A DNA stretch of 64,000 nt, from positions 1-64,000 of IMG/VR virus record IMGVR_UViG_3300021959_006010; one strand, written 5' to 3'. Under the pieces are notes generated by a model. It was not told where the DNA came from, did not search any database, and saw nothing but the letters and a program-made list of their open reading frames with translations. The position numbers and the translations under genes are program-made. Below, one piece after another: positions 17,859 to 42,173 of the stretch (the first letter of the stretch is position 1; each line of letters opens with the position of its first letter).

Positions 17859-18461
17859 ATGAGAGTAGAATTTCCACCTATAGTAAAAGTAGATACAAAT
17901 TATGCTGTAATTTTTAATCCAGATAATTTTTTAGTTACTGCTATTAAAAAGAACAGGGATATTCCTAAAGATGTTTCTTATCTAGAGACAACATTTGAAG
18001 ATGTTAGAGATATCATCGAAGGTAAAGAAACATTAAAGTCATGTAAAGTGGCATATGATATTAAAACAAAGCAATATCAATTAGTACGAAACAACATAGA
18101 ACAACCTGTATATACTGTTTCAGAACTAATTTATAAGATCCCAATTGAGGAAGAATCTGAGGCTGAAATACAAGTAATACAAGACATTGAAAATACTTGT
18201 TGGAAAATTTTTATGAGCGATGACCTTAGAACAAAGTTGACAAACGATGCAGTTAATGTTAATATAGATGTAAGTCTAAGTGTAACTGAAGAAAATAACC
18301 CTAATATTCTTTACCGAACATTAAAGTTTTCTTTGAAAGAGCTTATGCAGAAGTTTTACATTATTATAGACTTTAAACAAGAAAGAGAATTTAATGCAGA
18401 GCCGGTAAGTTTGTATACAATACAACGTTTTCAAACTTACTCTTACGAGGTTAAAAAATGA
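17859..18461 (+). CDS. Hypothetical protein
   Basis: 200-aa ORF abutting both neighbours. No recognisable motif. Confidence 0.7.
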   Translation: MRVEFPPIVKVDTNYAVIFNPDNFLVTAIKKNRDIPKDVSYLETTFEDVRDIIEGKETLKSCKVAYDIKTKQYQLVRNNIEQPVYTVSELIYKIPIEEESEAEIQVIQDIENTCWKIFMSDDLRTKLTNDAVNVNIDVSLSVTEENNPNILYRTLKFSLKELMQKFYIIIDFKQEREFNAEPVSLYTIQRFQTYSYEVKK

Positions 18462-19405
18462 GCGACAAATTTAAAATTTTAGATTATGATATCATTTATC
18501 TAAGTTACGACGAGCCAAACGCAGAAAAAAACTATGCAGATCTGTGTAGTAAAGTACCGTGGGCTAAACGTGTACACGGTGTAGAAGGATCAGATGCTGC
18601 ACACAAAGCATGTGCCGAATTATCAGAAACAGAACGATTTATTACGATCGACGGCGACAATATTGTAAACGCTAAGTTCTTGCATCAAGAATATGATCTT
18701 AACAATCACGAAGACGTACATTGGAATAGAGAAGTTGACTTTGATCAGTGCGTAGTAAGTTGGACTGCCCGTAATACTATTAACGGATTAATGTACGGCA
18801 ACGGTGGCATTAAATGTTGGCCTAAAGATAAAGTGCTTAACATGAAGACACACGAAAATGCTGATCCCGACAACGTACATGCACAAGTTGATTTTTGTTG
18901 GGATTTACAATACATACAAATGAATACTTGTTATAGTGAGATTATGAATAATTATACTCCGCATCAAGCTTGGCGTGCCGGATTCCGCGAAGGTGTTAAG
19001 ATGGCGCTAGATCGCGGCATTAAACCTAGCAAAGAAGAGTTTCTAGCAGGACATTGGAAAAACTTGCATAGACTATGGATCTGGCTAATGGTAGGTGCTG
19101 ATGTAGAAAACGGACGTTGGGCTATCTACGGTGCTCGTGAAGGCTTGTACAAAACAATGTGTACAGACTGGGACTTTGTAAATGTGCGTGACTTTGAATG
19201 GTTGAATACTTATTGGGATAGTAAAAACTTAGACGAAGTGGATATGGATAGCGAAACAGACGAACTTGGTGATAAACTTATACACGAGTTAGGTATTCCT
19301 ATTGCAGTAGATCCGTTAAATGCAGATCAGAGTGCATTCTTTAAAACAGTGTACCAAAATCCTAGCCGTAATCCTAAACAGCAATTTGTGGTTGCTCCTG
19401 AATGA
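18458..19405 (+). CDS. Glycosyltransferase-like protein (GT-A, DxD)
   Basis: YDIIYLSYDEPNA...VHGVEG..AAH...FITIDGD...YGNGGIK...AWRAGFRE. Homologous to the C-terminal domain of 40203..42173. Confidence 0.65.
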   Translation: MSDKFKILDYDIIYLSYDEPNAEKNYADLCSKVPWAKRVHGVEGSDAAHKACAELSETERFITIDGDNIVNAKFLHQEYDLNNHEDVHWNREVDFDQCVVSWTARNTINGLMYGNGGIKCWPKDKVLNMKTHENADPDNVHAQVDFCWDLQYIQMNTCYSEIMNNYTPHQAWRAGFREGVKMALDRGIKPSKEEFLAGHWKNLHRLWIWLMVGADVENGRWAIYGAREGLYKTMCTDWDFVNVRDFEWLNTYWDSKNLDEVDMDSETDELGDKLIHELGIPIAVDPLNADQSAFFKTVYQNPSRNPKQQFVVAPE

Positions 19406-24851: not shown

Positions 24852-25450
24852 TTGCACAGCCTCGCAGCGGCGGCACATTAGCGTGTGCAGTGTTAAGTAA
24901 AATACATAACATTCCTTATATAGGAGAATATTTTAATTCTCACAGATACGGTTATAATATACATAATCAATTGAGAGATTTTCCTAGTCCTGCTATAGTT
25001 AAAGCCAGCTTTTACGATTTAAAAGATAATTTTGATGAAGTAATGGAGTTGGGATTCAAAGAAATATATCACGTCAACAGAACAGATCCAGTAGGAATGG
25101 TATGTAGTAGTTTTATTTCCTCTATCACAGATGTTTTCCATGTTACAAAGAACGAAACTCATGAGCCAGTAAAAGATAAAATTATGGACAAGGATTTTGT
25201 TAAATGGTTTTTTTCAAAAGACAATCCCGGCGGATGGTTTTATAATAATTCTGCTAACATTCCTTTTATGGAAAAAGTAAATTATCATTCGTTATACTAT
25301 AACGACACAGTTGATGAAAACATTATGTTAGTACAAATAGCAAACGATTGTTATGGTATAAGTGTGGACATAAAAAAACTTTACAAAGATAAATCTCTAG
25401 CAATTAAAAACATAGACGAAGTTAAAGGCTGGGTTAGTGAATACATTTAA
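24821..25450 (+). CDS. Sulfotransferase-like protein
   Basis: VVAQPRSGGTL resembles the 5'-PSB loop. Also GEYF and R.DP....S (3'-PB-like). Confidence 0.55.
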   Translation: MGQMHSNILVVAQPRSGGTLACAVLSKIHNIPYIGEYFNSHRYGYNIHNQLRDFPSPAIVKASFYDLKDNFDEVMELGFKEIYHVNRTDPVGMVCSSFISSITDVFHVTKNETHEPVKDKIMDKDFVKWFFSKDNPGGWFYNNSANIPFMEKVNYHSLYYNDTVDENIMLVQIANDCYGISVDIKKLYKDKSLAIKNIDEVKGWVSEYI

Positions 25451-26180
25451 TAAAAATACTTTAGTTGTTTTTGGCGATAGTAATGTTTGGGGAGCAGAAT
25501 TAAAAGATGTGCCTCATAGACAACCAGACTTCAAAAGTGTTGTTTACGATCCAAAAGATATTGATAACTGGCCCTATCATATTAGACATAGTTTTTCAGG
25601 AGTCATTGCTGAAAAGAATAATATGCGTATATTAAACTTATCAATACCTGGATGCAGCAATGATACAATTTTTAGAAGGATAAACAAATTTTTACAAGGA
25701 AATTATCCTGTTGATCTTGATGACTGCTTTGTAATGGTTTTTTGGACAGGCATACTTCGTAGAGAATTTTTTAGATCAGACATAAACAAATATCTAAACT
25801 ATTCTCCTTTATGGGAAGAAAAACTACAACTGTTTCCTAAATTCCATAAAATTTATTCTAAACTTTTTATGCACGAAGGATATGATTTAGTTAAATCATT
25901 TAACTATCTAAATTCAGTTAATGCATTACTAACATACAACAATGTTGAATTTTGTCAAGGGTTTAGTTTAATGGAAACAGAATTAATTGAAACAGCTAAA
26001 AATGCAAACCTTCCTAAGTTTTTATCGTTCGATCCAAATGATGCAATTACTGCTATGGTTATTATTGCAGGCAACGGGTTTGAAAACAATGACTATATAT
26101 TAGAAGGCCATCATCCGTCCGAAAAAGGGCACCAACTAATTGCAAATAGATTTACTGAACTTCTTGACAAACTAGTATAA
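25437..26180 (+). CDS. SGNH/GDSL-like hydrolase or acyltransferase
   Basis: VFGDS, NLSIPGCSN and a C-terminal HHPSEKGH. Confidence 0.7.
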   Translation: MNTFNKNTLVVFGDSNVWGAELKDVPHRQPDFKSVVYDPKDIDNWPYHIRHSFSGVIAEKNNMRILNLSIPGCSNDTIFRRINKFLQGNYPVDLDDCFVMVFWTGILRREFFRSDINKYLNYSPLWEEKLQLFPKFHKIYSKLFMHEGYDLVKSFNYLNSVNALLTYNNVEFCQGFSLMETELIETAKNANLPKFLSFDPNDAITAMVIIAGNGFENNDYILEGHHPSEKGHQLIANRFTELLDKLV

Positions 26181-26208: not shown

Positions 26209-27261
26209 ATGAAGAGACATTTAATTTTAACTATATCAGACCCGCAAGACAAAGCTGATACACTTGACTTGAGAATTGACGTAAACGATACTGATATTTC
26301 CGAGCATTGGTTTAGTCACGTATGTAAATGCTTAGATACTAAGTTACATTTAGAGAAAAACTTTTGTTGGGTAGGCTGGCCCGATCCAGGACGTAACGTA
26401 GATTACTTAAAGAACGAACTACAAGAATGTGTTAACCAAATTAACACATTTGCTAAAACTAGTAACGAGTGGAACGGATATCGAATAGAAGAAGATTGGG
26501 ACGATATAGGTAGCCACGATGCTTTAAATAAATTACACCATCACTTCGAAATACTAATGGGTCAAGTGTGGGACGTAAGTCATTACATGATTACAGCAGA
26601 TGACAATACAAAGTATCAAATACGACAGTTGAATAATCTGGTACACGAATTACAAAGCAGACAAGTTGCTGTCGGATGTCCAATAGAATACTGTCAACCA
26701 CATACTATTGCAAGTTATCTTAATGTAGAACGAGAATTGTTTGAAGATCATTACTTTGATTACTTTAGCCATACACGAGAGTTTGGAGAAGTTTACTTGC
26801 ACTACTCACAAACAGGTAAAACTCCTGTAGAAGCGTATTCAGACAATGATGATGACGTGTTTGATAACAATATTAATGCACTAAGATACGTGTCCGGCGA
26901 ATATAACATTTGGTGGGGAGACCCTATGTCTGAAAAAGATGTTTTGTATTTTAAAGATCAAGTAAGAGGTTATTTAAACGAACGTAATCTTATTGTAGAG
27001 GAAGGTCCGGAATTTAATTATTATGTTGACAGTCAAGGAAACAAACAAGGAATAGGATATGTTCCGGTAGCAAAAGTTGTTAATCCGTACGATACTAGCC
27101 ACGAACTCAAGGCAGCTGTGCTTGATAAATTAAATATACATGCACTTGCTGCTTATATCGACGATACCGAAGTTGCTAAACACGTTTGGGATTACTCTTG
27201 GGCTGATAGTGACTATAAAGAAAAAGAAATAGACACACTAAGAGAGTTTTTCCCGAGATAA
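26209..27261 (+). CDS. Hypothetical protein, His-motif family member 1
   Basis: LNKLHHHFE...LNNLVHELQS...YSQTGKT. Paralogous to 30587 and 32671. Confidence 0.75.
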   Translation: MKRHLILTISDPQDKADTLDLRIDVNDTDISEHWFSHVCKCLDTKLHLEKNFCWVGWPDPGRNVDYLKNELQECVNQINTFAKTSNEWNGYRIEEDWDDIGSHDALNKLHHHFEILMGQVWDVSHYMITADDNTKYQIRQLNNLVHELQSRQVAVGCPIEYCQPHTIASYLNVERELFEDHYFDYFSHTREFGEVYLHYSQTGKTPVEAYSDNDDDVFDNNINALRYVSGEYNIWWGDPMSEKDVLYFKDQVRGYLNERNLIVEEGPEFNYYVDSQGNKQGIGYVPVAKVVNPYDTSHELKAAVLDKLNIHALAAYIDDTEVAKHVWDYSWADSDYKEKEIDTLREFFPR

Positions 27262-27262
27262 T

Positions 27263-28669
27263 ATGGCTGACTATAATAATGACTATCATAAATTAGTAAA
27301 CAAAGTAAAAGTTGACTTAGATAAAGTTGGCAAAGGATTTTGCTTGGCAAAATGGTACCATGTAAGTATGCATTTGCACACAGGGCAAAACCACAGTTGT
27401 TATCATCCACATGTACACAAGATTCCTTTAGAAGAAATTAAAGATGATGTAAATGCATTACACAACACAAAGTGGAAAAAGCAACAACGTAAAACTATGT
27501 TAGAAGGAGGACGTCCTCCAGAATGTAGCTATTGCTGGGACATTGAAGACCTTCCAGGCGATAACATATCAGATAGACATTTAAGATCAAGTGAGCATTG
27601 GGCATTGCCTAAGATGCAACAAGCTATAGACACTCCTTGGGACGCTAATGTGTATCCAACTTATTTAGAAGTAAATTTTGGTCATGAGTGTCAATTAAAA
27701 TGCAGCTATTGTGCGCCAATGGCAAGTTCTAGTTGGTTTAATGAAACTAAAAAACATGGTGATTGGCCCTTAGAAGGTAATGCAAACCGCGGGCAATATA
27801 ATATTAGAGGATTGTTGGAGCCTGGTGCGTTATACAAAAAAGAATCTGAAAACCCATATATAGAAGCATTTTGGAAATGGTTTCCAAATGCTTATCCTAA
27901 TCTAGAAACACTTAGATTTACAGGCGGAGAGCCTTTATTAAGTTCAAACGTATTTAAAGTTATTGACTATATTAGAGAAAATCCTAGAGATGACTTAGAG
28001 TTTGCTATTAATAGCAATATGTGTATTCCAAAACGTAACTTAGACAAGTTTTGCAAGCAAGTTGATGACCTATTGCGTTCTAATAAAATACGTCAAGCAA
28101 ATATTTTTACAAGTGTAGACACATGGGGCACACAAGCTGAATGGATTCGTAATGGACTAGACATTGAAAAGTACGAAGATAACTTACATTATTTTATGAA
28201 TAATGTTTACAATTCTAGTTTTAGTTTTATGATTACGTTTTGTTTGCTTAGTATTCCGAACTTTAATTTATTACTAGATAAAATATTGGAATTCCGTCAA
28301 AAGTACAACGATCCGGATAGTATGTTTCAGCGTATTAATTTTGATACTCCGTATATGCTAGAACCTCCGCATTTAACAGCACGTATTGCTGACGACGAAA
28401 CTGTTGCTAAACTACGTAGTCATTTAGACTATATGGAAACATTAGTTGATAATAAAGATATTAACAAATTTAATACTACTGAATATATGAAATTTAAACG
28501 TGTTGTCGAATGGGTCGAAAACAATAGGTATCAAGGCGACGAACTAAAAACTAATAGAAGAGATTTTGCAAAATTTATAGACGAACACGATCGTCGACGC
28601 AAGACTGACTGGCATTCTGCATTTCCTGAAATGGAAAACTTTTATTTAATGTGTAAGGGCGATCTATGA
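27263..28669 (+). CDS. Radical SAM protein with N-terminal twitch/SPASM-like domain
   Basis: CQLKCSYC and TGGEP. N-terminal FCLAKW...CYHP...CSYC. Close paralogue of 19402 (shared NPYIEAFWKWFP). Confidence 0.9.
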   Translation: MADYNNDYHKLVNKVKVDLDKVGKGFCLAKWYHVSMHLHTGQNHSCYHPHVHKIPLEEIKDDVNALHNTKWKKQQRKTMLEGGRPPECSYCWDIEDLPGDNISDRHLRSSEHWALPKMQQAIDTPWDANVYPTYLEVNFGHECQLKCSYCAPMASSSWFNETKKHGDWPLEGNANRGQYNIRGLLEPGALYKKESENPYIEAFWKWFPNAYPNLETLRFTGGEPLLSSNVFKVIDYIRENPRDDLEFAINSNMCIPKRNLDKFCKQVDDLLRSNKIRQANIFTSVDTWGTQAEWIRNGLDIEKYEDNLHYFMNNVYNSSFSFMITFCLLSIPNFNLLLDKILEFRQKYNDPDSMFQRINFDTPYMLEPPHLTARIADDETVAKLRSHLDYMETLVDNKDINKFNTTEYMKFKRVVEWVENNRYQGDELKTNRRDFAKFIDEHDRRRKTDWHSAFPEMENFYLMCKGDL

Positions 28670-29379
28670 GAGTAGGAATATTTGGTGATAGTTTTGCTAC
28701 TCACGGTAAACATGGAATCTCTGAAATAGGAGAAAGCTGGGTTTCGCTTTTAGAAAAAACACCTGGTCTCGATGTTACAGCCAACGGTCAAATGGCGGAT
28801 AATATTTACGGAACATATTCTAATATATTAGAGAATTATCATCATTTTGACACTATTATTTTTGTAATTACTTCTCCTGAGAGAGCAATTACGTCATTCC
28901 GTAAATTGGCTAGTTATCCTATGATGGAACATGTTCTTAAAACTGAAAAATTTACAAGAGAGCAAAAAGACATTATAAAATCTATCAAAGATTATCATTT
29001 TTATGCATTACAAGATAGCGCAGTTTATAATCAACTAATCGAATCTAATAAATTAATGATCGAAAAAGTTAGAAGAATTATAACTAATAGCAGACGTAAC
29101 TTAATACTAGTGCCAGCGTTCGAAGCAAGTAAAAAAGTATGTAAGGATCTAAAAGGTATCTCGCTTAGTTGCGTAACTGAATATGAAGATTTAAATACAG
29201 ACATTAAAAAAAGTAGCAAAAAAGGATACGATCTAAGACACTGCCACATGTCAGAAGAAAATAATAGAATTTTTTATGATTATATAATGAGTATTTTAAA
29301 AACTCCTGGAGTACAGACTACTAATTTAAATTTAGATATGTTTGTTATACCAGACAGCGTAGAGAAATATGCAACATGA
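28666..29379 (+). CDS. SGNH/GDSL-like protein
   Basis: IFGDSF near the N-terminus and CHMSEENN near the C-terminus. Confidence 0.6.
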   Translation: MRVGIFGDSFATHGKHGISEIGESWVSLLEKTPGLDVTANGQMADNIYGTYSNILENYHHFDTIIFVITSPERAITSFRKLASYPMMEHVLKTEKFTREQKDIIKSIKDYHFYALQDSAVYNQLIESNKLMIEKVRRIITNSRRNLILVPAFEASKKVCKDLKGISLSCVTEYEDLNTDIKKSSKKGYDLRHCHMSEENNRIFYDYIMSILKTPGVQTTNLNLDMFVIPDSVEKYAT

Positions 29380-30590
29380 TAAAAAACAATAAAACATTTT
29401 GTATATTGCCGTGGATACATACACACCTTAATACCGAAGGAGATGTATTTCCTTGTTGTATTAGTTGGAGTCCTGAAAGAAAATCTCGTGTTGGTTGGCT
29501 CAAAGACAATAGTTTAGAAGAACTGTTTAATAATGATTTTATGAAGCAGTTGAGATTAGACATGCTAGCCGGCGTCGAACGTCCAGATGTATGTTCTAAT
29601 TGTTACGATCGCGAGAACGGTGGCTTTAGAAGTGCTAGACAAGGATATAACTTAGATCACGAAAAAGATATGAGTATTGTTGATAGCACAGCCACTGATG
29701 GATATGTAGAACCGAAAATCAAAAGTTGGGATATACGGTTTAGTAATTTGTGTAATCTTAAATGTCGCACCTGTGGTCCGTTGTTTAGTACTACATGGGC
29801 TCAAGAAAAAACAGAAGAAGATTATGTAAAACTTAATGCAATCGAAAAAGGTACAGATCCATTAGAACAACAGTACGATCATGTTGAAAAGTTATACTTT
29901 GCAGGCGGCGAACCTTTAATTATGCCCGAGCATTACAAGACGCTCAAAGAGTTAATAAGTAGAGGTAGAGCAAAAGATATACAGATAATTTATAATAGTA
30001 ATCTAACAAAATTAGACTATAATAAAAATGATCTAGTAGGCTTATGGAAAGAATTTAAGAGTGTAGTAATTGGTGCAAGTATAGATGCTGTAGGTTCAAG
30101 AGCTGAATATATTAGAAATGGTGTTCCTTGGAAGACCATTGAATCTAATCTAAAAAGATTAATGGAATTTAAAAACGAATGTCCTACATTTGATTTTTAT
30201 TATAGTCCGACTGTAGGATTATTAAATATTGCACATATTACAGACATGCATAGATACATATACGAAAACAATTTAATTCCTAATATTAACTCTATTAATT
30301 TTAATTTGCTGTTATATCCATTACATTATGATATGAGAATATTACCTACTGAAATTAAAAACGATATTACAGAAAAATTTCAATTACACAAGAAGTGGTT
30401 AATTAGTATCGATGCACCAAAAGAAACAGTTGACAAGTTTAGTAATTTACGGCAATATTTAAATCAAACAGTTGAAAACTCTAATAGTTTATTAGAAGAA
30501 TTTATAACAGTTACAAAAAGACTTGATTCTTTAAGAGACGAGGACTTTAATATGTCCTTGCCAGAGTATAAAAGAATTGGAGTGCAATGA
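29376..30590 (+). CDS. Radical SAM protein with N-terminal twitch/SPASM-like domain
   Basis: FCILPW...GDVFPCC...CSNC, CNLKCRTC and AGGEP. Confidence 0.9.
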   Translation: MIKNNKTFCILPWIHTHLNTEGDVFPCCISWSPERKSRVGWLKDNSLEELFNNDFMKQLRLDMLAGVERPDVCSNCYDRENGGFRSARQGYNLDHEKDMSIVDSTATDGYVEPKIKSWDIRFSNLCNLKCRTCGPLFSTTWAQEKTEEDYVKLNAIEKGTDPLEQQYDHVEKLYFAGGEPLIMPEHYKTLKELISRGRAKDIQIIYNSNLTKLDYNKNDLVGLWKEFKSVVIGASIDAVGSRAEYIRNGVPWKTIESNLKRLMEFKNECPTFDFYYSPTVGLLNIAHITDMHRYIYENNLIPNINSINFNLLLYPLHYDMRILPTEIKNDITEKFQLHKKWLISIDAPKETVDKFSNLRQYLNQTVENSNSLLEEFITVTKRLDSLRDEDFNMSLPEYKRIGVQ

Positions 30591-31444
30591 AATTTATAAT
30601 TGAATATAAGACTTGGAAAAATGAAACTGACACATTAACTTATAAATTAAGAGATAATGAGTTAGTTGATGCTTGGTTACATTGTTTACAAAGTCAACCT
30701 CCACGTATGAATTATGGATTTTATAATTTAGAAACTATTGATTTTAAAAGAACTGCAATTGAAATAGCAAATGCATATTATAGATTGTATCCAAAGTTTT
30801 TAGAAAAAGATAGAGAAATAAATGCTGAACTTTTAGTCGACAAAAACGATAATATAAATCAAGATATTTTGAATAAACTGCACATGGTTTATCATTATTA
30901 CCAAGACAGGATTGAAGAGTATAATTTAACTGACAAGGACTCGTTAAATAGATTACAAGTTCTTAATGGAGGAATACATAGACTTGAATCATATTCAAAC
31001 GGAAGTCCTTCTTATCAAATTATGATAAATCCAACAAGATTTTCTCACGGAATGGAAATACCTGCATCATGGTATAAGAAGTATTTTAATGAGGAAGCTG
31101 AAAACGGTGATTTGCTTTTAGGTTATGCTACTATTGGTAAAGATTTACTAGAAATATATAATACTCGTGATGTTGAAAATTTACATTTAATAACTCCTCA
31201 GAAATACATCTATTCAGAGTTTAGACAAATGTTTGATGTCTTTGAAAAAAAGAGCAAACTAACAACGCATATTTTGCGCAAATGGTGTTACGATCACGGT
31301 AAAAAGAATTTGTCTGAAGCTGAATTGTATACGTTTAGGCCTAAACTAGGAAAAATAGAAACTGATCTAAATTTTTACGAGCTAAAAGAAAAGTGTAGAA
31401 ATTTTAAAGAACCGATTGGATGGAAAACAAAACATGAAAGATAA
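30587..31444 (+). CDS. Hypothetical protein, His-motif family member 2
   Basis: LNKLHMVYH...LNGGIHRLES...YATIGKD. Confidence 0.7.
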   Translation: MKFIIEYKTWKNETDTLTYKLRDNELVDAWLHCLQSQPPRMNYGFYNLETIDFKRTAIEIANAYYRLYPKFLEKDREINAELLVDKNDNINQDILNKLHMVYHYYQDRIEEYNLTDKDSLNRLQVLNGGIHRLESYSNGSPSYQIMINPTRFSHGMEIPASWYKKYFNEEAENGDLLLGYATIGKDLLEIYNTRDVENLHLITPQKYIYSEFRQMFDVFEKKSKLTTHILRKWCYDHGKKNLSEAELYTFRPKLGKIETDLNFYELKEKCRNFKEPIGWKTKHER

Positions 31445-32696
31445 TAAATCATTTTGCGTAATGCCTTGGCTACACTTACATGCTTGGCCTGCTGGAGAAG
31501 CATATCTTTGCTGTATCGGAGGAACAGGACGAGAAGAAAACGAGGTAGGCGATCTGTCAACACAATCAATAGCTGAAGTAATGAATGGCGACAAAATGAA
31601 ATCCATTCGAAAGAAGATGCTAGCTGGCGAAAAAATACCAAACTGTAAAAATTGTTACGAAGCTGAAGCAGGTAAAGGATATAGTTGGCGAGAAGGGTTT
31701 AATGCACAGTTTGCTGATGAAATAGAAGGCATTGTAGAAAACACAGCTGAAGACGGTACAATTGATCCAAAATTGCTTTATGTGGATTTTAGATTTAGTA
31801 ATTTGTGTAATCTTGAATGTAGAACGTGTGGCAGTGAGCTTAGTAGCAGTATTGCTAGTACGCTAGGACGAAATTTTCCAATCAAGCGCCAAGCTGAACT
31901 AGAAGAAAAAGGAGTAATGGGCAAAGGTAATATTGTTGCTTACTCTAATAAGAATAAACTTTTTACAGACGATCTAAAACAGTATCTTAAAGACACAAAA
32001 TGTTTTTATTTTGCAGGTGGCGAACCATTAATGCAAAAAGAGCACCACGAAGTTTTAAAGTATGTGCATGATAACAAATGGTTTGACAAAGAATTACGTT
32101 ATAGCACTAACTTGTCAAACCTACATTATAAGCAAACAGACTTTGTTGAAATGTGGAAAGATTTTGAAAATGTATGGTTAATGTGTAGTATCGATCACTA
32201 CGGAGATAAACTAGAACATATCCGTCAAAATGTTAACAGTGATCGACTTTGGAAAAATTTTGATAGACTAGTTAGCACACATTTCAAATTATCTATAACA
32301 TTTGTTGTTAGTATATATAACATATATTATTTGTATGACTTCTTTAAATTCTTAGATGACAAAGGATATATTGACAGATTACATTCTTTAGAAATGCTAT
32401 ATGTATTTGGTGATACCGAATCACCTGCTTGTTTACCAGATTTTGCTAAAGCAGAATTAATAGAAAAGTTAAAGGCTGACGAAGAAAGCGAGTTATATAA
32501 GCGTTTGTGTGACAAGTTCTCATACTTAGCTTCAGGTATACAAGGTCTACCTGGATTTGTAAACGGGCAGTCAACCTTTACATTTGAACAATTTATTGAT
32601 AGAGTAGAAAAGTTTGACAAGATGTATAATAGAAATACTAGCGAAACATTTCCGTGGTTAGGAGAAGTAATTGAAAAAAGTAAAACTTCTAATTAA
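31434..32696 (+). CDS. Radical SAM protein with N-terminal twitch/SPASM-like domain
   Basis: FCVMPW...GEAYLCC...CKNC, CNLECRTC and AGGEP. The ATG at 31434 is preferred over the longer track start. Confidence 0.9.
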   Translation: MKDNKSFCVMPWLHLHAWPAGEAYLCCIGGTGREENEVGDLSTQSIAEVMNGDKMKSIRKKMLAGEKIPNCKNCYEAEAGKGYSWREGFNAQFADEIEGIVENTAEDGTIDPKLLYVDFRFSNLCNLECRTCGSELSSSIASTLGRNFPIKRQAELEEKGVMGKGNIVAYSNKNKLFTDDLKQYLKDTKCFYFAGGEPLMQKEHHEVLKYVHDNKWFDKELRYSTNLSNLHYKQTDFVEMWKDFENVWLMCSIDHYGDKLEHIRQNVNSDRLWKNFDRLVSTHFKLSITFVVSIYNIYYLYDFFKFLDDKGYIDRLHSLEMLYVFGDTESPACLPDFAKAELIEKLKADEESELYKRLCDKFSYLASGIQGLPGFVNGQSTFTFEQFIDRVEKFDKMYNRNTSETFPWLGEVIEKSKTSN

Positions 32697-33531
32697 CGAA
32701 GATTATATTGTTATTGAATTAAAAAATAACGATATATCATCCTTGTGGCTTAATAATATACGTCAACAAAATGATATGTCAATACGTTCTGTAAGCGATC
32801 CTCATTATATAGATCCAGTTAACAATCAAGATTATACTTCTGGTGTTTGGAATAAAATTAAAGAAAACATAAACACTATAGAAACGGAATTTAATATTAA
32901 ATGGCCTGAAGAAGTTCCAGATGTATTTAATTTTGATCAGCAAATAATGAATAGATATCATAGATATTTTGCACAGTCAACGATGTTTTATAATAGATGG
33001 CAAATAGATCACGATTATAGATTTGACGAAATTCCTGTAGAAAAGCAAAAAAGATTTTCAGACTTGTTAGAAGAAATAAATTTTTCTATACACGAACTTG
33101 AAAGCTATACAATTACTCCAAGAATACAAAAGTATAAAAATAAAATTAAAAAGTTGTATATCGATTTCTCACCAACTAATTGGATAAATTTACCTCATAA
33201 TACTGTACACAGTGCCGACAAAGAATACAATGTGTGTATTGCTATGGAAGTACACGGAAAAAATTATTTGCAAGCATTTATAGATGACGATGTACCTTTC
33301 CATCCCGATGTGCATGGACAGCGAGGAATGTTTGGAAGGATTGATATTTACACAGACGATACAGTTTTTGATATTTTAGAAAGTGAAGAATTTAAAAATT
33401 GGTTAGGAACTGAAAGTATAAAAGATTATTCTTTAGTGCAATTAGGGAAAGTTATTGAATCATCACAGCCGCTTTCTAAATTGTACGATGTTTTAGCAAG
33501 TGGAGTAGCAATGGAGATTATTGAGCTATGA
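32671..33531 (+). CDS. Hypothetical protein, His-motif family member 3
   Basis: MNRYHRYFA...INFSIHELES...EVHGKN. TTG start with an AGGAG SD. Confidence 0.7.
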   Translation: MKKVKLLINEDYIVIELKNNDISSLWLNNIRQQNDMSIRSVSDPHYIDPVNNQDYTSGVWNKIKENINTIETEFNIKWPEEVPDVFNFDQQIMNRYHRYFAQSTMFYNRWQIDHDYRFDEIPVEKQKRFSDLLEEINFSIHELESYTITPRIQKYKNKIKKLYIDFSPTNWINLPHNTVHSADKEYNVCIAMEVHGKNYLQAFIDDDVPFHPDVHGQRGMFGRIDIYTDDTVFDILESEEFKNWLGTESIKDYSLVQLGKVIESSQPLSKLYDVLASGVAMEIIEL

Positions 33532-34697
33532 TTAAATGTATAAATGCAAAAAATGGAATCAGAGCTTATAACGATGGATCAGTTATGCTATGCTGTATGA
33601 GTACAGAAAAATTAACAGACAAAGACGGCAACATTGCGTCTGTTAAAAATACCCCAATTAATGATATTAGAAACGGAAAGAAATCTAAAGAAATACTAGA
33701 TGCGTTAGCACGGGGAGAAAAACACCCTAATTGTGAACGTTGTTGGAAAGAAGAAGATGCTGGATTATACAGCAAACGTTTGCGAGACAACGACACATTT
33801 AAATACGTACCTAGTAATGATACTAGTTTAGTACTAGCAGAATTAAATTTAGGAACCACATGTAATTTGAAGTGTAGAATTTGCGGCCCTTGGAGCAGTA
33901 GCCAATGGAATAAAGAATTTTTACAAATAGGCCAATGGGGAAGTGATAAAGACTCGTATAAAAAATGGCTACATGACCTTAACCATAGTTATGACGACGA
34001 CAGCCAATTTTGGGAAGAATTTAAAGCCCAGCTTCCTTCTTTAAAGAGAATAGAAATGTATGGAGGTGAACCCTTTCTAGTAAAGAAGCAGTGGGAAATG
34101 CTAAAGTATGCTATTGATCAAGGATACAGTAAAAAACAAAGTTTAAATTTTAATACAAACGGTACTGTTTTTGATATGGACAAAGTAAACATACTTAGAG
34201 AATTTAAACATGTACACATTAGTTTTAGTATAGACGGTATTAAAGACAAATTTGAATATCAAAGACATCCTGCAAAATGGGATGAAGTAAGTGACAATAT
34301 AAAAAGGTATCAGTATCTAGCAAATAAGTATGACTGGAATCTTGCAGTATGTATTACTGTTAACAATTACAATGTATTCTATTTACAAGAAACAATGGAA
34401 TATTTTGAAAATATTAATATGGAATATTATCTTAATTTTTTACATGATCCGTCGAGATATTCTGTTGTAAACCTACATCAAGACATTAAAGATCATCTCA
34501 CATATAAGTATAATAGATATAAGGGAATGCCTAACATAGAAATGTGGCTTAAGAAAGCAGCAGAATATATGAATCTAAAAACTAGTAAGGAAGATTATTG
34601 GGATGCCTTTTTAAATATTACTAAACAGTTAGATGATCTAAGACAAGAAAAGTTTAGTGATGTGTTTCCCGAATTAGCAGAGTTTATAAAAAAATGA
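33528..34697 (+). CDS. Radical SAM protein with N-terminal twitch/SPASM-like domain
   Basis: KCINA...GSVMLCC...CERC, CNLKCRIC and YGGEP. Confidence 0.9.
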   Translation: MIKCINAKNGIRAYNDGSVMLCCMSTEKLTDKDGNIASVKNTPINDIRNGKKSKEILDALARGEKHPNCERCWKEEDAGLYSKRLRDNDTFKYVPSNDTSLVLAELNLGTTCNLKCRICGPWSSSQWNKEFLQIGQWGSDKDSYKKWLHDLNHSYDDDSQFWEEFKAQLPSLKRIEMYGGEPFLVKKQWEMLKYAIDQGYSKKQSLNFNTNGTVFDMDKVNILREFKHVHISFSIDGIKDKFEYQRHPAKWDEVSDNIKRYQYLANKYDWNLAVCITVNNYNVFYLQETMEYFENINMEYYLNFLHDPSRYSVVNLHQDIKDHLTYKYNRYKGMPNIEMWLKKAAEYMNLKTSKEDYWDAFLNITKQLDDLRQEKFSDVFPELAEFIKK

Positions 34698-35869
34698 AAA
34701 CATGGAATTTAGAAAATGTAGGATATCTGCATATTGAATTAAGTAACTTTTGTAATGCTGCTTGTCCAATGTGTCCTAGATATATCTATCATACAGAAAT
34801 AATAGATCCGTCTTTGTCTCTTAATCAAATGAGTTTTGAAGATTTTAAAACTTATTTTCCTAGAACACTGTTAGAAAACATACACAGGGTAACATTTTGT
34901 GGAACACACGGTGATCCCATGACAGCAAAAGATGTTATTCCTATAGTTGAATACTTGTATTCGTGCAATCCAAAAATGTATATTTCAGTTAATACTAATG
35001 GCGGTTTACGCAATCCGGAATTCTGGAACGAGCTCGGTAAATTAATGTCGGATAAAATGCATGCTGTAACTTTTAGTATTGACGGCCTTGAAGATACGAA
35101 TCATTTATATAGACGTAGAGTACGCTGGAATACTTTAATTAACAATGTAAAAAGTTTTATTAATGCAGGAGGCACAGCATACTGGGATTATTTGATTTTT
35201 GAACACAATGAACATCAAATAGACACTGCAAAAAAGATGAGCATAGATTTAGGATTTGAAAAATTCTTTTCTAAAAGAGCATTAGGATTTTCGTCAAATG
35301 TTGACGGGTCTTATAAGCCTAGTCCAGTTTACGATAAAAACGGAGATTTTGAATATTACCTATCGCCACCAAACGATGAAGAGTATGTTAATTCTGGTAG
35401 CAAGAAAGTAAAGCATAACTTAACTGAAAAAGTTAATCCGGAATGGTATTTAAATTTTAGAAATAATTTAACTACAGACAATCTTGACGAAAAATATAAA
35501 ATACACATAGACAAAGAAATTGATTGTAAATTCTTACATAGAGATAAACAAAATAGTTTTACTGAGCTATACATTAATGCAAATGGATTAGTTATACCTT
35601 GTTGTTATATGGGCTCAGCAATTACAGGTTCGTTTGGAGAAGAACAAGAATTACAAGTAAGAAACATAATAGACAATCATAAAGATGAGCTTGATTTAAA
35701 TAAACAGTCGTTAGAAAAAATATTAGAGAGTAGAATATTAGATAGACTCTTTATTAAACAATGGAGTAAAGAAAAATTCTCAGACGGAAAACCTGTATTT
35801 TGTTCTTTGATGTGCGGAAAAAACAATAGCATTGATCGGATATTCGTAGACGACGGAAAGATACAATGA
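34694..35869 (+). CDS. Radical SAM protein with C-terminal twitch/SPASM domain
   Basis: CNAACPMC, CGTHGDP and FSIDG. C-terminal C...GLVIPCC...CSLMC. Paralogue of 44622. Confidence 0.9.
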   Translation: MKTWNLENVGYLHIELSNFCNAACPMCPRYIYHTEIIDPSLSLNQMSFEDFKTYFPRTLLENIHRVTFCGTHGDPMTAKDVIPIVEYLYSCNPKMYISVNTNGGLRNPEFWNELGKLMSDKMHAVTFSIDGLEDTNHLYRRRVRWNTLINNVKSFINAGGTAYWDYLIFEHNEHQIDTAKKMSIDLGFEKFFSKRALGFSSNVDGSYKPSPVYDKNGDFEYYLSPPNDEEYVNSGSKKVKHNLTEKVNPEWYLNFRNNLTTDNLDEKYKIHIDKEIDCKFLHRDKQNSFTELYINANGLVIPCCYMGSAITGSFGEEQELQVRNIIDNHKDELDLNKQSLEKILESRILDRLFIKQWSKEKFSDGKPVFCSLMCGKNNSIDRIFVDDGKIQ

Positions 35870-37029
35870 TATATGAGAATATTTATGATCACTTAAATAA
35901 AGACTTACTTGAAACACTTACTGATAAAAAAGAAGTTTTTTCTTTTGAGTATATGTGCAAATTTTTAAATGTAGCAAAAACTACAAGTGAAATTACTAGC
36001 TCTAAAGTATTTGTTGTAAATGTTTTAAATTTTTTAGGCTTTGTAGAAAAGCTAAGTCCTACAGGATTTTTAGACAGAGAGATAAAAAACAAAATAAATT
36101 CTGGCAATGCTAAATTAGTAATAAATCATTGTCACGAACGCACACACAAATATTCTAATCCATTCTACCGTACTATTTGGAATACCTTAATAGAAAAAAT
36201 TCAAACAGCAGGGATAGATCTAAGACAGGTTACTTTTTTAAGCGGTGATCGATATATTGAAAAATCCTTTGCAGTCGAAAGTCCTTTGTACAAAGTAATA
36301 GGACTAGATACAATGGAGTTCGTGTACAACAGATGGTCACAATATCACAATGTTTATTCTGTGCCGTTTTCGCTTGATAAAGATATTGATTTTTTGTTTT
36401 TAAATGCAGTTCCAAGAGAGCATCGGTGTGTTATAAGATATCTTTTAAATGAAAAGGATTTTTTAAAAAATTCTATTAACAGTTGGGTTATTGGAGATAG
36501 ACGGCCTGTACTTGAAGATATTAAAACATTTATTAAGCATACACAGTTAACTATAGATCCGCAAGAAATATATAACTATTCTTTGGTACAAAAGACACTA
36601 GACAGCACATCAAAGAATCTCCGAGGACAAGGTAACCAAAATTTTATGCAACTAAACTGGTTAAAAGAAACTAAGTTTAGTTTTGTATTAGAGACAGGCT
36701 ATCAAGAAAACATAATGTTAGTATCGGAAAAGACTTTTAAACCTATGCTGTTCAAACATCCTTTTATGGTTTATAGTCATCCTAACCATTTAACCTATTT
36801 AAAAGAATGCGGGTACGAAACATATCCAGAGCTATTTGACGAATCGTACGATTTACAAGACGACAGTGTAAAGATTAATACAATGCTACAAAATTTAGAG
36901 TCGTTTAAAGATCGTGCAGAAGGCAAAGAAAAAATTATAAATGAAAAACTAGAACATAACCGACAGCAGTTTTTATCACAACCATGTCTAAAAACTACAA
37001 AGCAATCTCTGATAAGTATTTTTGAATGA
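35866..37029 (+). CDS. Putative glycosyltransferase (GT10/GT-B-like, SEKT family)
   Basis: FLNAVPREHR, VLET...VSEKTFKPM...HPF and L...GYET...FDESYD. Confidence 0.5.
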   Translation: MIYENIYDHLNKDLLETLTDKKEVFSFEYMCKFLNVAKTTSEITSSKVFVVNVLNFLGFVEKLSPTGFLDREIKNKINSGNAKLVINHCHERTHKYSNPFYRTIWNTLIEKIQTAGIDLRQVTFLSGDRYIEKSFAVESPLYKVIGLDTMEFVYNRWSQYHNVYSVPFSLDKDIDFLFLNAVPREHRCVIRYLLNEKDFLKNSINSWVIGDRRPVLEDIKTFIKHTQLTIDPQEIYNYSLVQKTLDSTSKNLRGQGNQNFMQLNWLKETKFSFVLETGYQENIMLVSEKTFKPMLFKHPFMVYSHPNHLTYLKECGYETYPELFDESYDLQDDSVKINTMLQNLESFKDRAEGKEKIINEKLEHNRQQFLSQPCLKTTKQSLISIFE

Positions 37030-40202: not shown

Positions 40203-42173
40203 ATGTATGATATCGTTTTTATAGGTCCTGCAGACTCACAATGGAAAAAAATTAAATCAAAGTATATTACTGCAAAACGTGCTGACACATTTTTGTCAGC
40301 TAAGAAAAAAGCATTTACTAAATTCTTTTGGGCAGTATCTTCTGATTTAGAAATAGCAGATAATTTTAATTTTGATTATGTTCCTGACGACTACAGTCAA
40401 GACGTAATACACGTTTTTAAAAATGACAAGCATTTTGATGGATTGTTTTTATCTCCTAGAGATGCTAATCCGTCCCAGCGAGAACTAGATCATAGATTCT
40501 TTGTACATAAAAAAGAAGTTGACATTCTAGCAAGTGTACCTTTACCTTTTGATTACTTCGAAATTGATTCTTACGAAGATTACGAGTACGCACTTGAAAA
40601 TAGCAAAACACAAATGTTTTGGATGGGCAGTAGAAATATAGAACCTAGCAAAGAGCTAATAGAAAATTTTTATATATCGCATCATGAAAAAATTGATCGT
40701 ACTCAAAATCATGCATTTAAGCATCTTACAAAAGACGGCGAAACGTATAACGGACTGTTTCTGTGTACAAAAGACCGAAAACTTTCAAAACGAGAAGTCG
40801 AATATCGATTTCCTGTCGATCGTAAAGAATGGGATATTGTTGGTAGCGGTCCTAAAAAATATGATGTTTTTACAATTGAAACTTATGACGATTATCTAGA
40901 AGCAGTTAACAATAGTACAACTGAAATGTTTTGGGCATTAAAGCCGTCAATTGATACATCTGAGTTTGACTTTGACATTTATTTTAGTTTTGAAAACACT
41001 TATGATAGAGAAACTAATCACGCCTTTTTGCACAACGAACAAGGCGAAATGTTAAGAAACAGTGTTTGGTTGTTATCAAAAACACAGCCGGTTTCTAAGA
41101 GAGAAATTGAATATAGATTTATTGTAAATGCAAAAGAATGGGACGTTGTTGCTAGTAAAACAAAATTGTACGATCAATTTATTGTAGACACCTATGATGA
41201 TTATTTGAAAGCATTAGAAAATACTTCAACAGAAATGTTCTGGGCAATTCCTAGTCGAATTAAAGATATAAATGAAGAAATTTTTAATAAAGTTTTTACA
41301 TACAAAAATATGCACGACAAAGAAAACGAATATGATCTTAATATAAATCATGTCTATAAAAACGGTGAATACTTTGATGGTATAATTTTATGTAGCACAA
41401 CTTGTAAGATTAGTAAAAGAGAGTTTTATTTCGGATTTATAGTGCAAAAGAAAGAAGTAGATATAGTTGCTAGTCAGCCAAAGCCCTATGACATAGTGTT
41501 TATTAGCTATAACGAACCAAACGCAAACGAAAACTTTGACCAGTTAATGGATCAATTCCCTGATAGAGTAATACATCGTGTACACGGTATAAAAGGAATA
41601 CACCAAGCTCACATTGAAGCAGCAAAAATTTGTGATACTGAAATGGTATGGATTGTTGACGGCGATGCAAAAATAGTCGACGGATTTAATTTTGATTATC
41701 AGGTTCCTGCATGGGAGAGAACTACAGTACACGTTTGGCGAAGTCAGAATCCTATTAATAAATTAGTATACGGCTATGGCGGCATTAAACTATTTCCTAC
41801 ACAACTAACAATAGACATGAACGTAAATAAACCCGACATGACTACAAGTATTAGCGAAAAGTTTAAAGCAGTTAAAGATGTTAGTAACATTACAGCATTT
41901 AACACAGATCCGTTTAACACTTGGAAAAGTGCATTTAGAGAATGTTGTAAGTTAAGTTCTAAGATTATTGATCGTCAAAAAGACGACGAAACAAACGAGC
42001 GTTTAAACATATGGTGTACAGCAGGAGAAGATGAGCTTTACGGTAAGTATTCTATAGAAGGAGCAAAGGCTGGTGCAGCATATGGTGCAAGAAACAAAGA
42101 CGATGTTAAAGCCTTAAAAATGATTAACGACTTTGACTGGTTAAAGGAGCAGTTTGATGCTACAGACATTTGA
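40203..42173 (+). CDS. Glycosyltransferase-like protein with four N-terminal degenerate repeats
   Basis: Four ~107-aa repeats (TEMFWA...SKRE...F....KE.DIVAS), then a GT-A domain from 41487 (YDIVFISYNEPNA...WIVDGD...YGYGGIK...WKSAFRE). Confidence 0.7.
   Translation: MYDIVFIGPADSQWKKIKSKYITAKRADTFLSAKKKAFTKFFWAVSSDLEIADNFNFDYVPDDYSQDVIHVFKNDKHFDGLFLSPRDANPSQRELDHRFFVHKKEVDILASVPLPFDYFEIDSYEDYEYALENSKTQMFWMGSRNIEPSKELIENFYISHHEKIDRTQNHAFKHLTKDGETYNGLFLCTKDRKLSKREVEYRFPVDRKEWDIVGSGPKKYDVFTIETYDDYLEAVNNSTTEMFWALKPSIDTSEFDFDIYFSFENTYDRETNHAFLHNEQGEMLRNSVWLLSKTQPVSKREIEYRFIVNAKEWDVVASKTKLYDQFIVDTYDDYLKALENTSTEMFWAIPSRIKDINEEIFNKVFTYKNMHDKENEYDLNINHVYKNGEYFDGIILCSTTCKISKREFYFGFIVQKKEVDIVASQPKPYDIVFISYNEPNANENFDQLMDQFPDRVIHRVHGIKGIHQAHIEAAKICDTEMVWIVDGDAKIVDGFNFDYQVPAWERTTVHVWRSQNPINKLVYGYGGIKLFPTQLTIDMNVNKPDMTTSISEKFKAVKDVSNITAFNTDPFNTWKSAFRECCKLSSKIIDRQKDDETNERLNIWCTAGEDELYGKYSIEGAKAGAAYGARNKDDVKALKMINDFDWLKEQFDATDI

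What the first reader, a model, noticed from the sequence alone, without database searches (positions are those of the whole stretch)
26209..33531. Unknown three-member His-motif protein family, each gene directly upstream of a twitch radical SAM gene
Seen: 26209, 30587 and 32671 share an N-terminal W motif, (L/M)N.(L/Y)H..(F/Y), (L/I)N..(I/V)H.L(E/Q)S and a downstream GK. They are immediately followed by radical SAM genes 27263, 31434 and 33528 respectively. Inference: the paired helical His/Glu motifs suggest a metal-binding helical bundle (hemerythrin- or diiron-like) acting as a dedicated partner, for example in O2 protection, iron delivery or a coupled oxidation.
Basis: partly seen in the sequence, partly recalled or inferred. 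Interest (0 to 1): 0.68.

Follow-up and report, generated by a model that had tools for sequence, protein, structure and literature searches.

The report
Unknown protein family beside radical-SAM genes
Three distantly related genes in a marine jumbo-phage genome belong to a large, unnamed protein family that travels with, and is sometimes fused to, an uncharacterised class of radical-SAM enzymes. The setting looks like a sugar-tailoring gene cluster, and the family's chemistry is still unknown.

Summary
ORFs 26209-27261, 30587-31444 and 32671-33531 are true, distant paralogues (profile-profile E 3e-8 to 7.5e-6). They share W, N..H, N...H, GK and D positions that stay invariant in about 200 diverse relatives. 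Each abuts NF033640 "N-terminal twitch" radical SAM genes.

It is not a three-member family. A profile search finds 1372 cluster representatives, mostly from uncultured aquatic phages and Bdellovibrionota. None is in Pfam, NCBIfam or PHROGs.

The AlphaFold model (pLDDT 92) is a cyclophilin-like beta-barrel with an inserted small helical bundle that carries the two His motifs. It is not a hemerythrin or diiron four-helix bundle.

The link to radical SAM genes is strong:
- The genes are adjacent in most of about 90 phage loci, and there the radical SAM gene is usually upstream, not downstream.
- Two natural fusions to N-twitch radical SAM domains exist.
- The two families co-occur in Bdellovibrionota genomes (9 of 10 against 22 of 141).

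The family is also fused to glycosyltransferase-like domains. Its neighbours include carbamoyltransferase, P-loop kinase, SGNH-like and sugar-nucleotide genes.

Best reading: a non-redox catalytic or substrate-presenting component of a sugar-tailoring radical-SAM cassette, triplicated in this phage lineage. Metal binding, His co-location and physical binding remain untested.

The parts
26209..27261 (+). Family member 1 (P0001, 350 aa). Cyclophilin-like barrel with a helical insert.
   Evidence: ORF. 46 word-search relatives. AF2 model pLDDT 92.4, pTM 0.89. Fold matches.
26527..26538 (+). Codons N107..H110 of P0001 (first Asn-x2-His motif, helix 103-117).
   Evidence: Invariant in A2. N107 197/203 and H110 203/203 in 207 members.
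26632..26646 (+). Codons N142..H146 of P0001 (second motif, Asn-x3-His, helix 132-154).
   Evidence: N142 205/205 and H146 205/205.
26815..26850 (+). Codons G203-K204 to D214 of P0001 (invariant Gly-Lys loop and Asp).
   Evidence: G203 204/205, K204 205/205, D214 197/205.
30587..31444 (+). Family member 2 (P0002, 285 aa). Equivalent residues: W30, N96, H99, N127, H131, G184, K185, D195.
   Evidence: hhalign against the P0001 subfamily gives E 3.3e-8.
32671..33531 (+). Family member 3 (P0003, 286 aa, TTG start). Equivalent residues: W26, N94, H97, N137, H141, G196, K197, D207.
   Evidence: hhalign E 7.5e-6 and 2.3e-6.
27263..28669 (+). N-terminal-twitch radical SAM, clade A, directly downstream of member 1.
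   Evidence: NF033640 at 301.9 bits. CxxxCxxC plus 4 N-terminal Cys. The pairing with P0001 orthologues is kept in L015-L020.
29376..30590 (+). N-terminal-twitch radical SAM, clade B. Its stop overlaps the start of member 2.
   Evidence: NF033640 at 385.6 bits. Closest window relative of the radical SAM half of the fusion P0157 (34%).
31416..32696 (+). N-terminal-twitch radical SAM lying between members 2 and 3 (alternative ATG start at 31434).
   Evidence: NF033640 at 324.1 bits. Same sandwich in relatives L097-L101.
33528..34697 (+). N-terminal-twitch radical SAM, clade C, directly downstream of member 3.
   Evidence: NF033640 at 314.1 bits. Tree.
28666..29379 (+). 237-aa gene between radical SAM A and B (P0004). 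SGNH-like by its N-terminal GDS block; this is my reading.
   Evidence: No Pfam or NCBIfam hit. A 241-242-aa gene holds the same position in L097 and L100.
25437..26180 (+). DUF6071 / GDSL-like gene directly upstream of member 1 (P0006).
   Evidence: Pfam DUF6071 E 8e-6 and Lipase_GDSL E 1.7e-4, both just under cut-off. DUF6071 recurs in 6 of 81 neighbour proteins of related loci.
34694..35869 (+). Radical SAM with a C-terminal SPASM domain (canonical domain order).
   Evidence: Pfam.
35866..37029 (+). P0005, a 387-aa unknown protein. It is homologous to the C-terminal domain fused to a family member in P0178. Its glycosyltransferase-like character is my reading only.
   Evidence: BLASTP E 6e-7 to P0178:290-673. 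Paralogue at 43335-44213. No Pfam or PDB hit.

Best explanation
What it is. The three genes are paralogues of a large, unnamed protein family. The fold is a cyclophilin-like beta-barrel with an inserted three-helix bundle.

The conserved site. A small set of polar residues is invariant. Asn107-His110 lies on one helix and Asn142-His146 on the next. Gly203-Lys204 and Asp214 lie in the barrel half, on a short loop-helix-loop stretch between strands. I read these as one conserved catalytic or ligand-binding site.

The setting. The family is a fixed component of a conserved cassette of about four N-terminal-twitch radical SAM enzymes. That cassette occurs in more than 200 aquatic phage contigs and in predatory Bdellovibrionota.

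Most likely role. The protein works on the same sugar-type substrate as those enzymes, without redox chemistry of its own. It could hold or present the substrate to the neighbouring radical SAM enzyme. Alternatively it could carry out an acid-base step, for example enolisation, epimerisation or elimination on a keto-sugar made by a BtrN-like twitch radical SAM dehydrogenation. In this phage lineage the gene has been multiplied, so that a copy sits at three of the radical SAM gene junctions.

Shown: homology, predicted fold, residue invariance, gene linkage, fusions and co-occurrence.
Inferred: that the invariant residues form one site, that the substrate is a sugar or glycan, the type of chemistry, and physical contact with the radical SAM enzyme.
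For: Family and invariant residues.

Fold. The top ESM Atlas match is also a PPIase, and BFVD holds only uncharacterised phage proteins.

Linkage.
- Of 106 family genes in fetched loci, an N-twitch radical SAM gene lies directly upstream in 53, on both sides in 8, directly downstream in 3, and elsewhere within 6 kb in 22.
- A distinct radical SAM clade of 49 rows (support 100) has 41 members directly upstream of the family gene.
- The sandwich arrangement of 30587 and 32671 is kept in relatives of about 50% identity.

Fusions.
- P0157 is family domain 13-301 plus NF033640 337-746, E 2e-104.
- L011 has one open frame of at least 1628 aa, with N_Twi rSAM at aa 4-424 and the family domain at aa 1310-1611, followed by a GT2 gene.

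Co-occurrence.
- 5 of 5 Bdellovibrionota genomes with the family have NF033640 above cut-off, against 0 of 14 controls.
- In 151 sampled genomes the counts are 9 of 10 against 22 of 141, Fisher p 2e-6.

Sugar context.
- The window cluster holds an epimerase, a UDP-glucose dehydrogenase and GT2-like genes.
- Neighbours in 13 other loci include carbamoyltransferase (8), DUF6071/SGNH (6), P-loop kinase (5), DegT, epimerase and PIG-L.
- P0093-type fusions carry a GT-A-like domain (Z 8-9.9) and a Rossmann methyltransferase-like domain in front of the family domain.
- P0178 fuses the family domain to a P0005-like domain.

No conserved Cys or redox motif is present.
Against: - No biochemical data exist for this family or for NF033640.
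- The invariant residues could not be shown to be co-located, because no coordinates were available.
- Seven of the window's ten N-twitch radical SAM genes lack such a neighbour.
- Orthologues of 29376, 31416 and 33528 in L015-L020 have no 30587- or 32671-like gene beside them.
- 20 of 106 family genes have no N-twitch radical SAM gene within 6 kb by my threshold. One Bdellovibrionota genome has the family without a detected NF033640 gene.
- The commonest cassette has no glycosyltransferase within 6 kb, so a small-molecule or nucleic-acid substrate is not excluded.
- The genome co-occurrence statistic ignores relatedness of the genomes.
Confidence: 0.45

Rival explanations
1. Mononuclear metalloenzyme. 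H110, H146 and D214, with K204 and the Asn residues as second shell, bind one Fe(II), Mn or Zn ion. The protein would then be a hydrolase, lyase or oxygenase acting in the same pathway. This is the surviving core of the first reader's metal-binding idea.
For: Two invariant His and one near-invariant Asp. E114 lies one turn after H110 in 88% of members. Pathway linkage as for the main explanation.
Against: Only three candidate ligands are invariant. E114 is H or S in the 30587 and 32671 subfamilies. No match to any metalloprotein family or fold. The geometry was not testable here.
Confidence: 0.2
2. Protein substrate or carrier. The family protein is itself modified by the adjacent radical SAM enzyme, for example at the invariant Lys or His. 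Alternatively it carries the growing substrate on Lys204 through the four radical SAM steps. Lipoyl-domain and maturase systems are the models.
For: An invariant Gly-Lys sits in a loop just ahead of a short helix in the barrel half. Gene pairing with, and fusion to, radical SAM domains is tight. Paralogue multiplication parallels the radical SAM paralogues in the window.
Against: Four further invariant polar residues on the helical insert are not explained by a carrier role. One family gene usually serves a cassette of four radical SAM genes. Fusion to glycosyltransferase-like domains fits an enzyme or binding module better.
Confidence: 0.12
3. Hemerythrin- or diiron-like helical bundle that protects the radical SAM clusters from O2 or delivers iron.
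For: The His motifs lie on adjacent helices of a small bundle. The phage is from oxic estuary and marine water, where Fe-S enzymes are vulnerable.
Against: The fold is a cyclophilin-like barrel, not a four-helix bundle. The ligand signatures are absent. Most N-twitch radical SAM genes in this genome and in related loci lack a partner. The family is also fused to glycosyltransferase-like domains.
Confidence: 0.03
4. The linkage is only pathway co-membership. The protein is an independent tailoring enzyme or carbohydrate-binding module with no direct interplay with any radical SAM enzyme.
For: The adjacent radical SAM gene belongs to different clades in different lineages. In TARA loci L001-L006 the gene follows a carbamoyltransferase instead. 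Some Bdellovibrionota copies have no radical SAM gene nearby.
Against: Two independent fusions to N-twitch radical SAM domains. One radical SAM clade is almost always the immediate neighbour.
Confidence: 0.2

Closest known systems
Cyclophilin-fold proteins (PPIases; cyclophilin-like enzymes such as the Pictet-Spenglerases McbB and KslB; TM1367 and 3kop)
   Same: The predicted beta-barrel core superposes on dozens of cyclophilins: Z 8-10, rmsd 3.1-3.7 Å, 130-150 residues. It also superposes on McbB and KslB at Z 8.0-8.1. The top ESM Atlas match is a PPIase.
   Different: No sequence match to Pfam Pro_isomerase or any other family. A helical insert of about 100 residues carries the invariant Asn/His motifs. 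The invariant residue set is unlike the PPIase site; that comparison rests on my own knowledge, since no residue-level superposition was available.
PqqD / RRE-type partner proteins of SPASM and twitch radical SAM enzymes
   Same: A separate, sometimes fused, non-redox protein encoded next to a radical SAM enzyme that has an auxiliary-cluster domain. This is a possible working analogy as a substrate presenter.
   Different: Three to four times larger and of a different fold. It has catalytic-looking invariant residues. The context is sugar-type rather than peptide, and no precursor peptide was seen.
Twitch radical SAM sugar enzymes with downstream tailoring enzymes (BtrN- and DesII-type pathways)
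   Same: Radical SAM enzymes with one auxiliary cluster, clustered with sugar-nucleotide, aminotransferase, carbamoyl- and glycosyl-transferase genes.
   Different: Here the twitch domain is N-terminal (NF033640). The family has no solved or characterised member. The partner family has no counterpart in those pathways.
Hemerythrin and ferritin-like diiron four-helix bundles
   Same: His residues on neighbouring helices of a small bundle.
   Different: Only two invariant His, no paired ExxH or HxxxE/HxxxH sets, and the bundle is an insert in a beta-barrel.

Membership tests
Hemerythrin / diiron-carboxylate helical bundle | The whole domain is an up-down four-helix bundle. | tested here: not met
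   The AF2 model (pLDDT 92.4) has 13 strands. The core matches cyclophilin barrels at Z 8-10. Only residues ~58-160 match helical bundles, at Z 6-7.9.
Hemerythrin / diiron-carboxylate helical bundle | Ligand signature: 5 His plus 2 carboxylates (H, HxxxE, HxxxH, HxxxxD), or two ExxH plus two Glu. | tested here: not met
   Only H110 and H146 are invariant His. E114 is 88% conserved and is replaced in the 30587 and 32671 subfamilies. There is no ExxH pair.
Hemerythrin / diiron-carboxylate helical bundle | Binds iron. | not testable with these tools
   Needs ICP-MS or spectroscopy of purified protein.
Cyclophilin-type PPIase (Pfam PF00160) | Eight-stranded cyclophilin barrel fold. | tested here: met
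   VIA-align Z 8.2-10.0, 128-152 residues aligned, to more than 25 cyclophilin entries. Atlas PPIase TM 0.34/0.36 over 153 residues. This is a fold-level match only.
Cyclophilin-type PPIase (Pfam PF00160) | Sequence match to the Pro_isomerase profile. | tested here: not met
   No Pfam or NCBIfam family for any of the three at E<=0.1, except a sub-threshold HdcB hit.
Cyclophilin-type PPIase (Pfam PF00160) | PPIase active-site residues on the barrel face. | not testable with these tools
   No residue-level superposition or coordinates are returned.
NF033640 N_Twi_rSAM (the neighbouring genes) | Score above the curated cut-off of 170 bits over the full model. | tested here: met
   27263 scores 301.9, 29376 385.6, 31416 324.1 and 33528 314.1 bits.
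NF033640 N_Twi_rSAM (the neighbouring genes) | CxxxCxxC radical SAM motif plus N-terminal Cys set for an auxiliary cluster. | tested here: met
   All ten window paralogues keep CxxxCxxC and 4-5 N-terminal Cys. Pfam places SPASM before Radical_SAM.
PqqD / RRE partner | About 90-aa winged-helix RRE fold or PqqD profile match. | tested here: not met
   No Pfam hit. The fold is different.
HdcB (PF17528) | Score above the gathering threshold of 30.4 bits. | tested here: not met
   P0002 alone scores 20.2 bits, E 5.8e-4. P0001 and P0003 give nothing.

The most novel reading that the evidence does not exclude
The family is the second subunit of a new two-component radical-SAM system, fused into one chain in some organisms. 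A cyclophilin-like barrel with a His/Lys/Asp site captures or isomerises the radical-generated intermediate of an N-terminal-twitch radical SAM enzyme. Aquatic jumbo phages and predatory Bdellovibrionota use arrays of such pairs to build a heavily tailored sugar, on a surface glycan or possibly on DNA, by chemistry that does not need O2.
Probability: 0.25. Interest if true: 0.8.

Novelty: new variant of a known kind. Interest (0 to 1): 0.62.

Why it matters
Radical SAM enzymes with dedicated partner proteins have repeatedly revealed new chemistry. Here both halves are uncharacterised: NF033640 has no studied or solved member, and the partner family is in no domain library. Both are abundant in uncultured aquatic phages, and this 275-kb phage carries at least 15 radical SAM genes in one 40-kb cluster. 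The invariant His/Asn/Lys/Asp set, the natural fusion proteins and the compact conserved cassette (four radical SAM genes, one family gene, a kinase and a carbamoyltransferase) give enzymologists a direct, clonable entry point. They could use it to find out what these phages make during infection.

Tried and rejected
- Complex prediction. Complex prediction on the 27263 radical SAM protein plus P0001, using alignments A7 and A5, returned "no answer" (ipSAE 0.00). It counts neither for nor against binding.
- Folding the fusion. I meant to fold the natural fusion P0157. MAFFT laid the family rows onto the radical SAM half (A8), so that alignment was not used and the fusion was not folded.
- Coupling analysis. 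Mean-field DCA on 285 sequences was dominated by gap artefacts at the termini. It gave no helix-helix or helix-loop couplings, so it says nothing about His co-location.
- Fold and feature searches. Foldseek against the PDB gave nothing significant, only weak kinase and topoisomerase rows. The Atlas feature search gave no usable hit.
- Sequence libraries. Pfam, NCBIfam, PHROGs and PDB sequences gave no family. The sub-threshold HdcB hit for P0002 was rejected.
- Cultured phages. tblastn of P0001 and P0002 and megablast of the region found nothing. Ralstonia phage RsoM2USA has an N-twitch radical SAM gene but no family gene near it.
- The search for related loci with the all-subfamily alignment A2 failed for lack of a conserved stretch. 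A5 was used instead.
- A Walker-A reading of "GKT" was rejected. The upstream Gly is missing, and the residue after Lys is not conserved in the other subfamilies.
- Literature searches found no paper on this family or on NF033640.

Full report
Setting. The window is the first 64 kb of a single 275,366-bp IMG/VR virus record. The record has 37% G+C, 10 tRNA genes, linear ends and a CheckV completeness of 77%. Near-identical DNA occurs in estuary and marine metagenomes.

Bases 1-15.8 kb encode phage tail-type proteins: a 2840-aa FG-GAP protein, a tail-collar protein and a Peptidase_G2 fibre protein. From about 16 to 58 kb, one long plus-strand operon holds at least 15 radical SAM genes. These comprise:
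- ten of the N-terminal-twitch type by my own HMM, at 19402, 27263, 29376, 31416, 33528, 45710, 47008, 48417, 49504 and 52905;
- two B12-binding ones, at 23064 and 37026;
- three others, at 34694, 44622 and 55066.

The same operon also holds an NAD epimerase (22177), a UDP-glucose dehydrogenase (38957), GT2-like genes (40203, with its relative 18458), SGNH/DUF6071-like genes and two nitroreductase-family genes. A marine T4-like viral genome with 12 radical SAM genes was noted before, without functional assignment (PMC5332604).

The observation. Pairwise BLASTP is marginal. Each ORF has its own metagenomic relatives: 46, 5 and 11. Profiles of the three subfamilies match one another over most of their length, at hhalign E 3.3e-8, 7.5e-6 and 2.3e-6.

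Eight columns are invariant across the 36-sequence joint alignment: W34, N107, H110, N142, H146, G203, K204 and D214. An exhaustive profile search of 1.84 billion cluster representatives found 1372 relatives at E<=1e-3 and 886 at E<=1e-10. In 207 of these diverse sequences H110, N142, H146 and K204 never vary, while N107, D214 and W34 vary in about 3-4%. The family is real and large, and it carries a sharply conserved polar residue set. It is absent from Pfam-A, NCBIfam, PHROGs and PDB sequences.

Fold. AlphaFold2 with the 36-row alignment gives a confident model of P0001 (pLDDT 92.4, pTM 0.89). Foldseek finds nothing in the PDB. The exhaustive VIA-align search gives a long, consistent run of cyclophilin-fold proteins at Z 8-10, rmsd 3.1-3.7 Å and 130-150 aligned residues spanning model residues 1-320. 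That run also includes the cyclophilin-like enzymes McbB and KslB and the atypical cyclophilins TM1367 and 3kop. Residues ~58-160 separately match small helical bundles at Z 6-7.9.

The best ESM Atlas match is again a PPIase. BFVD holds ten uncharacterised phage proteins of the same fold, one of them from the cultured Agrobacterium jumbo phage Atu_ph07.

The two Asn/His motifs lie on consecutive helices of the insert (103-117 and 132-154). The Gly-Lys and Asp lie in the barrel half, on a short loop-helix-loop stretch between strands. I could not read coordinates, so whether these residues meet in space is an inference.

Linkage to radical SAM genes. The genes at 27263, 29376, 31416 and 33528 all exceed the NF033640 (N_Twi_rSAM) cut-off by a wide margin. 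They keep CxxxCxxC plus four N-terminal cysteines.

I fetched 80 IMG/VR loci (of 201 that encode a relative), 6 GTDB loci and 13 metagenome loci. The 94 loci held at that point, plus the window, were scanned with two HMMs built here. Of 106 family genes:
- 53 have an N-twitch radical SAM gene directly upstream on the same strand;
- 8 have one on both sides;
- 3 have one only downstream;
- 22 have one elsewhere within 6 kb, many of them only 180-300 nt away;
- 20 have none.

The commonest cassette is radical SAM A (27263-like), then B (29376-like), then C (33528-like), then D, then the family gene. A small SGNH/DUF6071 or P-loop-kinase gene often follows, and then a carbamoyltransferase. Clade D is a separate, well-supported branch of 49 sequences, 41 of which lie directly upstream of the family gene.

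In the window's nearer relatives the order differs. P0001 orthologues sit directly upstream of the 27263 orthologue (L015-L020). The 29376, 31416 and 33528 orthologues there follow one another with no room for a family gene. In relatives at about 50% identity, the 30587-like and 32671-like genes are again sandwiched between the same radical SAM types.

The general rule is membership of the cassette, with the radical SAM gene more often on the upstream side. The three copies in this phage are a lineage-specific multiplication.

Fusions and co-occurrence. P0157 (754 aa) joins a family domain (13-301) to a full NF033640 domain (337-746, E 2e-104). The radical SAM half is closest to 29376. In a Bdellovibrionales MAG, one open frame of at least 1628 aa begins with an N-twitch radical SAM domain and ends with a family domain. 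A GT2 glycosyltransferase gene follows it.

All five Bdellovibrionota genomes found to encode the family have several NF033640 genes above cut-off, against none of 14 control genomes. In 151 sampled genomes of that phylum the family occurs in 10 and NF033640 in 31, and 9 have both. The odds ratio is 49 and Fisher p is 2e-6, not corrected for relatedness.

Other fusions point to sugars. At least seven representatives and two loci carry a roughly 400-aa N-terminal extension. A moderate-confidence model of it (pLDDT 71) resembles GT-A glycosyltransferases over residues 1-200 (Z 8-9.9) and Rossmann methyltransferases over residues 230-400. P0178 joins the family domain to a domain homologous to window gene 35866.

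Interpretation. The conserved polar set, the lack of any Cys or redox motif, the fixed place in a radical SAM cassette, the fusions to radical SAM and glycosyltransferase-like domains, and the sugar-type neighbours all fit one reading. In that reading the family is a non-redox enzyme or substrate-binding subunit acting on the same sugar-type substrate as the radical SAM enzymes.

A His/Lys/Asp constellation is what carbon-acid chemistry on keto-sugars uses. This is my own knowledge of RmlC-type epimerases and ketoisomerases, offered as an analogy and not tested. Twitch radical SAM enzymes such as BtrN make such ketones. Hence my preferred but unproven mechanism. A mononuclear His2-Asp metal site, a carrier or substrate role for Lys204, and mere pathway co-membership remain open. 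The hemerythrin/diiron and O2-protection reading fails on fold, ligand count and distribution.

Limits.
- No coordinates, so no residue geometry.
- The complex prediction gave no verdict (listed only under Tried and rejected).
- The substrate of the cluster is unknown. A DNA-sugar or small-molecule target cannot be excluded. The genome does encode a ThyA-family enzyme, and the common cassette pairs a P-loop kinase with a carbamoyltransferase.
- The radical SAM HMM and its thresholds are my own.

Noticed in passing
window 16000-58400: A 40-kb plus-strand operon in a jumbo phage with at least 15 radical SAM genes. Ten are N-terminal-twitch type, two are B12-binding and three are others. It also holds epimerase, UDP-glucose dehydrogenase, GT2-like, nitroreductase-family and QueC-like genes, and it lies directly after the tail-fibre genes. 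The product is unknown.
   Followed up: partly
window 27263-28669, 29376-30590, 31416-32696, 33528-34697 and six more: In these radical SAM proteins the SPASM/twitch Cys domain precedes the radical SAM core, which is the reverse of the usual order (NF033640). By sequence search with a profile of the 27263-type clade, no member is solved; the only hit is a weak MoaA match.
   Followed up: partly
window 35866-37029 and 43335-44213: Two paralogous unknown proteins share a domain with the C-terminal half of the family fusion P0178. A motif resembling fucosyltransferase-type GT-B enzymes is my reading only. No Pfam or PDB hit.
   Followed up: partly
window 18458-19405 vs 40203-42173: The 315-aa gene ahead of radical SAM 19402 is homologous to the C-terminal GT2-like part of the 656-aa protein at 40203 (28% over 257 aa).
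   Followed up: no
window 16169-17029 and 17022-17858: Adjacent unknown genes are paralogues (25% over 192 aa, E 8e-9). 17022 has a weak PHROG 1903 hit of unknown function.
   Followed up: no
window 2-8524: A 5'-open ORF of 2840 aa with an FG-GAP repeat and a weak CBM_5_12 hit, followed by tail-collar (9153-11246) and Peptidase_G2 (13166-14653) proteins. Presumably giant tail fibres.
   Followed up: no
window 54108-55172, 57741-58397, 58408-59223(-): Two nitroreductase-family proteins, the first 354 aa with the domain in its C-terminal half, and an Asp/Asn beta-hydroxylase-like gene lie at the end of the cluster.
   Followed up: no
G000:C1:156591-157730 (-), outside the window: An eleventh N-twitch-type radical SAM gene lies alone next to a cluster of seven tRNA genes (157737-159245).
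   Followed up: no
L011:1-4884: A Bdellovibrionales MAG has one open frame of at least 1628 aa with an N-twitch radical SAM domain at the start and the family domain at the end. About 880 residues of unknown nature lie between them. A GT2 gene follows.
   Followed up: partly
L001-L006 (TARA and other marine phage contigs): Relatives of 30587 (33-35% identity) sit directly after a NodU/CmcH-type carbamoyltransferase (4-nt overlap) and before a DUF1353 gene. A second, weak family hit lies about 6 kb downstream, next to a fatty-acid desaturase and a ferredoxin.
   Followed up: partly
G004:C82:132958-173114 and other Bdellovibrionota genomes: Predatory Bdellovibrionota carry islands with many NF033640 paralogues, up to about 16 above cut-off in one MAG. 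One island contains a family gene.
   Followed up: no
BFVD A0A2L0UZJ4 (Agrobacterium phage Atu_ph07): The only structural relative in a cultured phage (Foldseek E 2.8e-9, 12% identity). It would be a tractable system, but tblastn with the 27263 protein found no match in that phage record.
   Followed up: no
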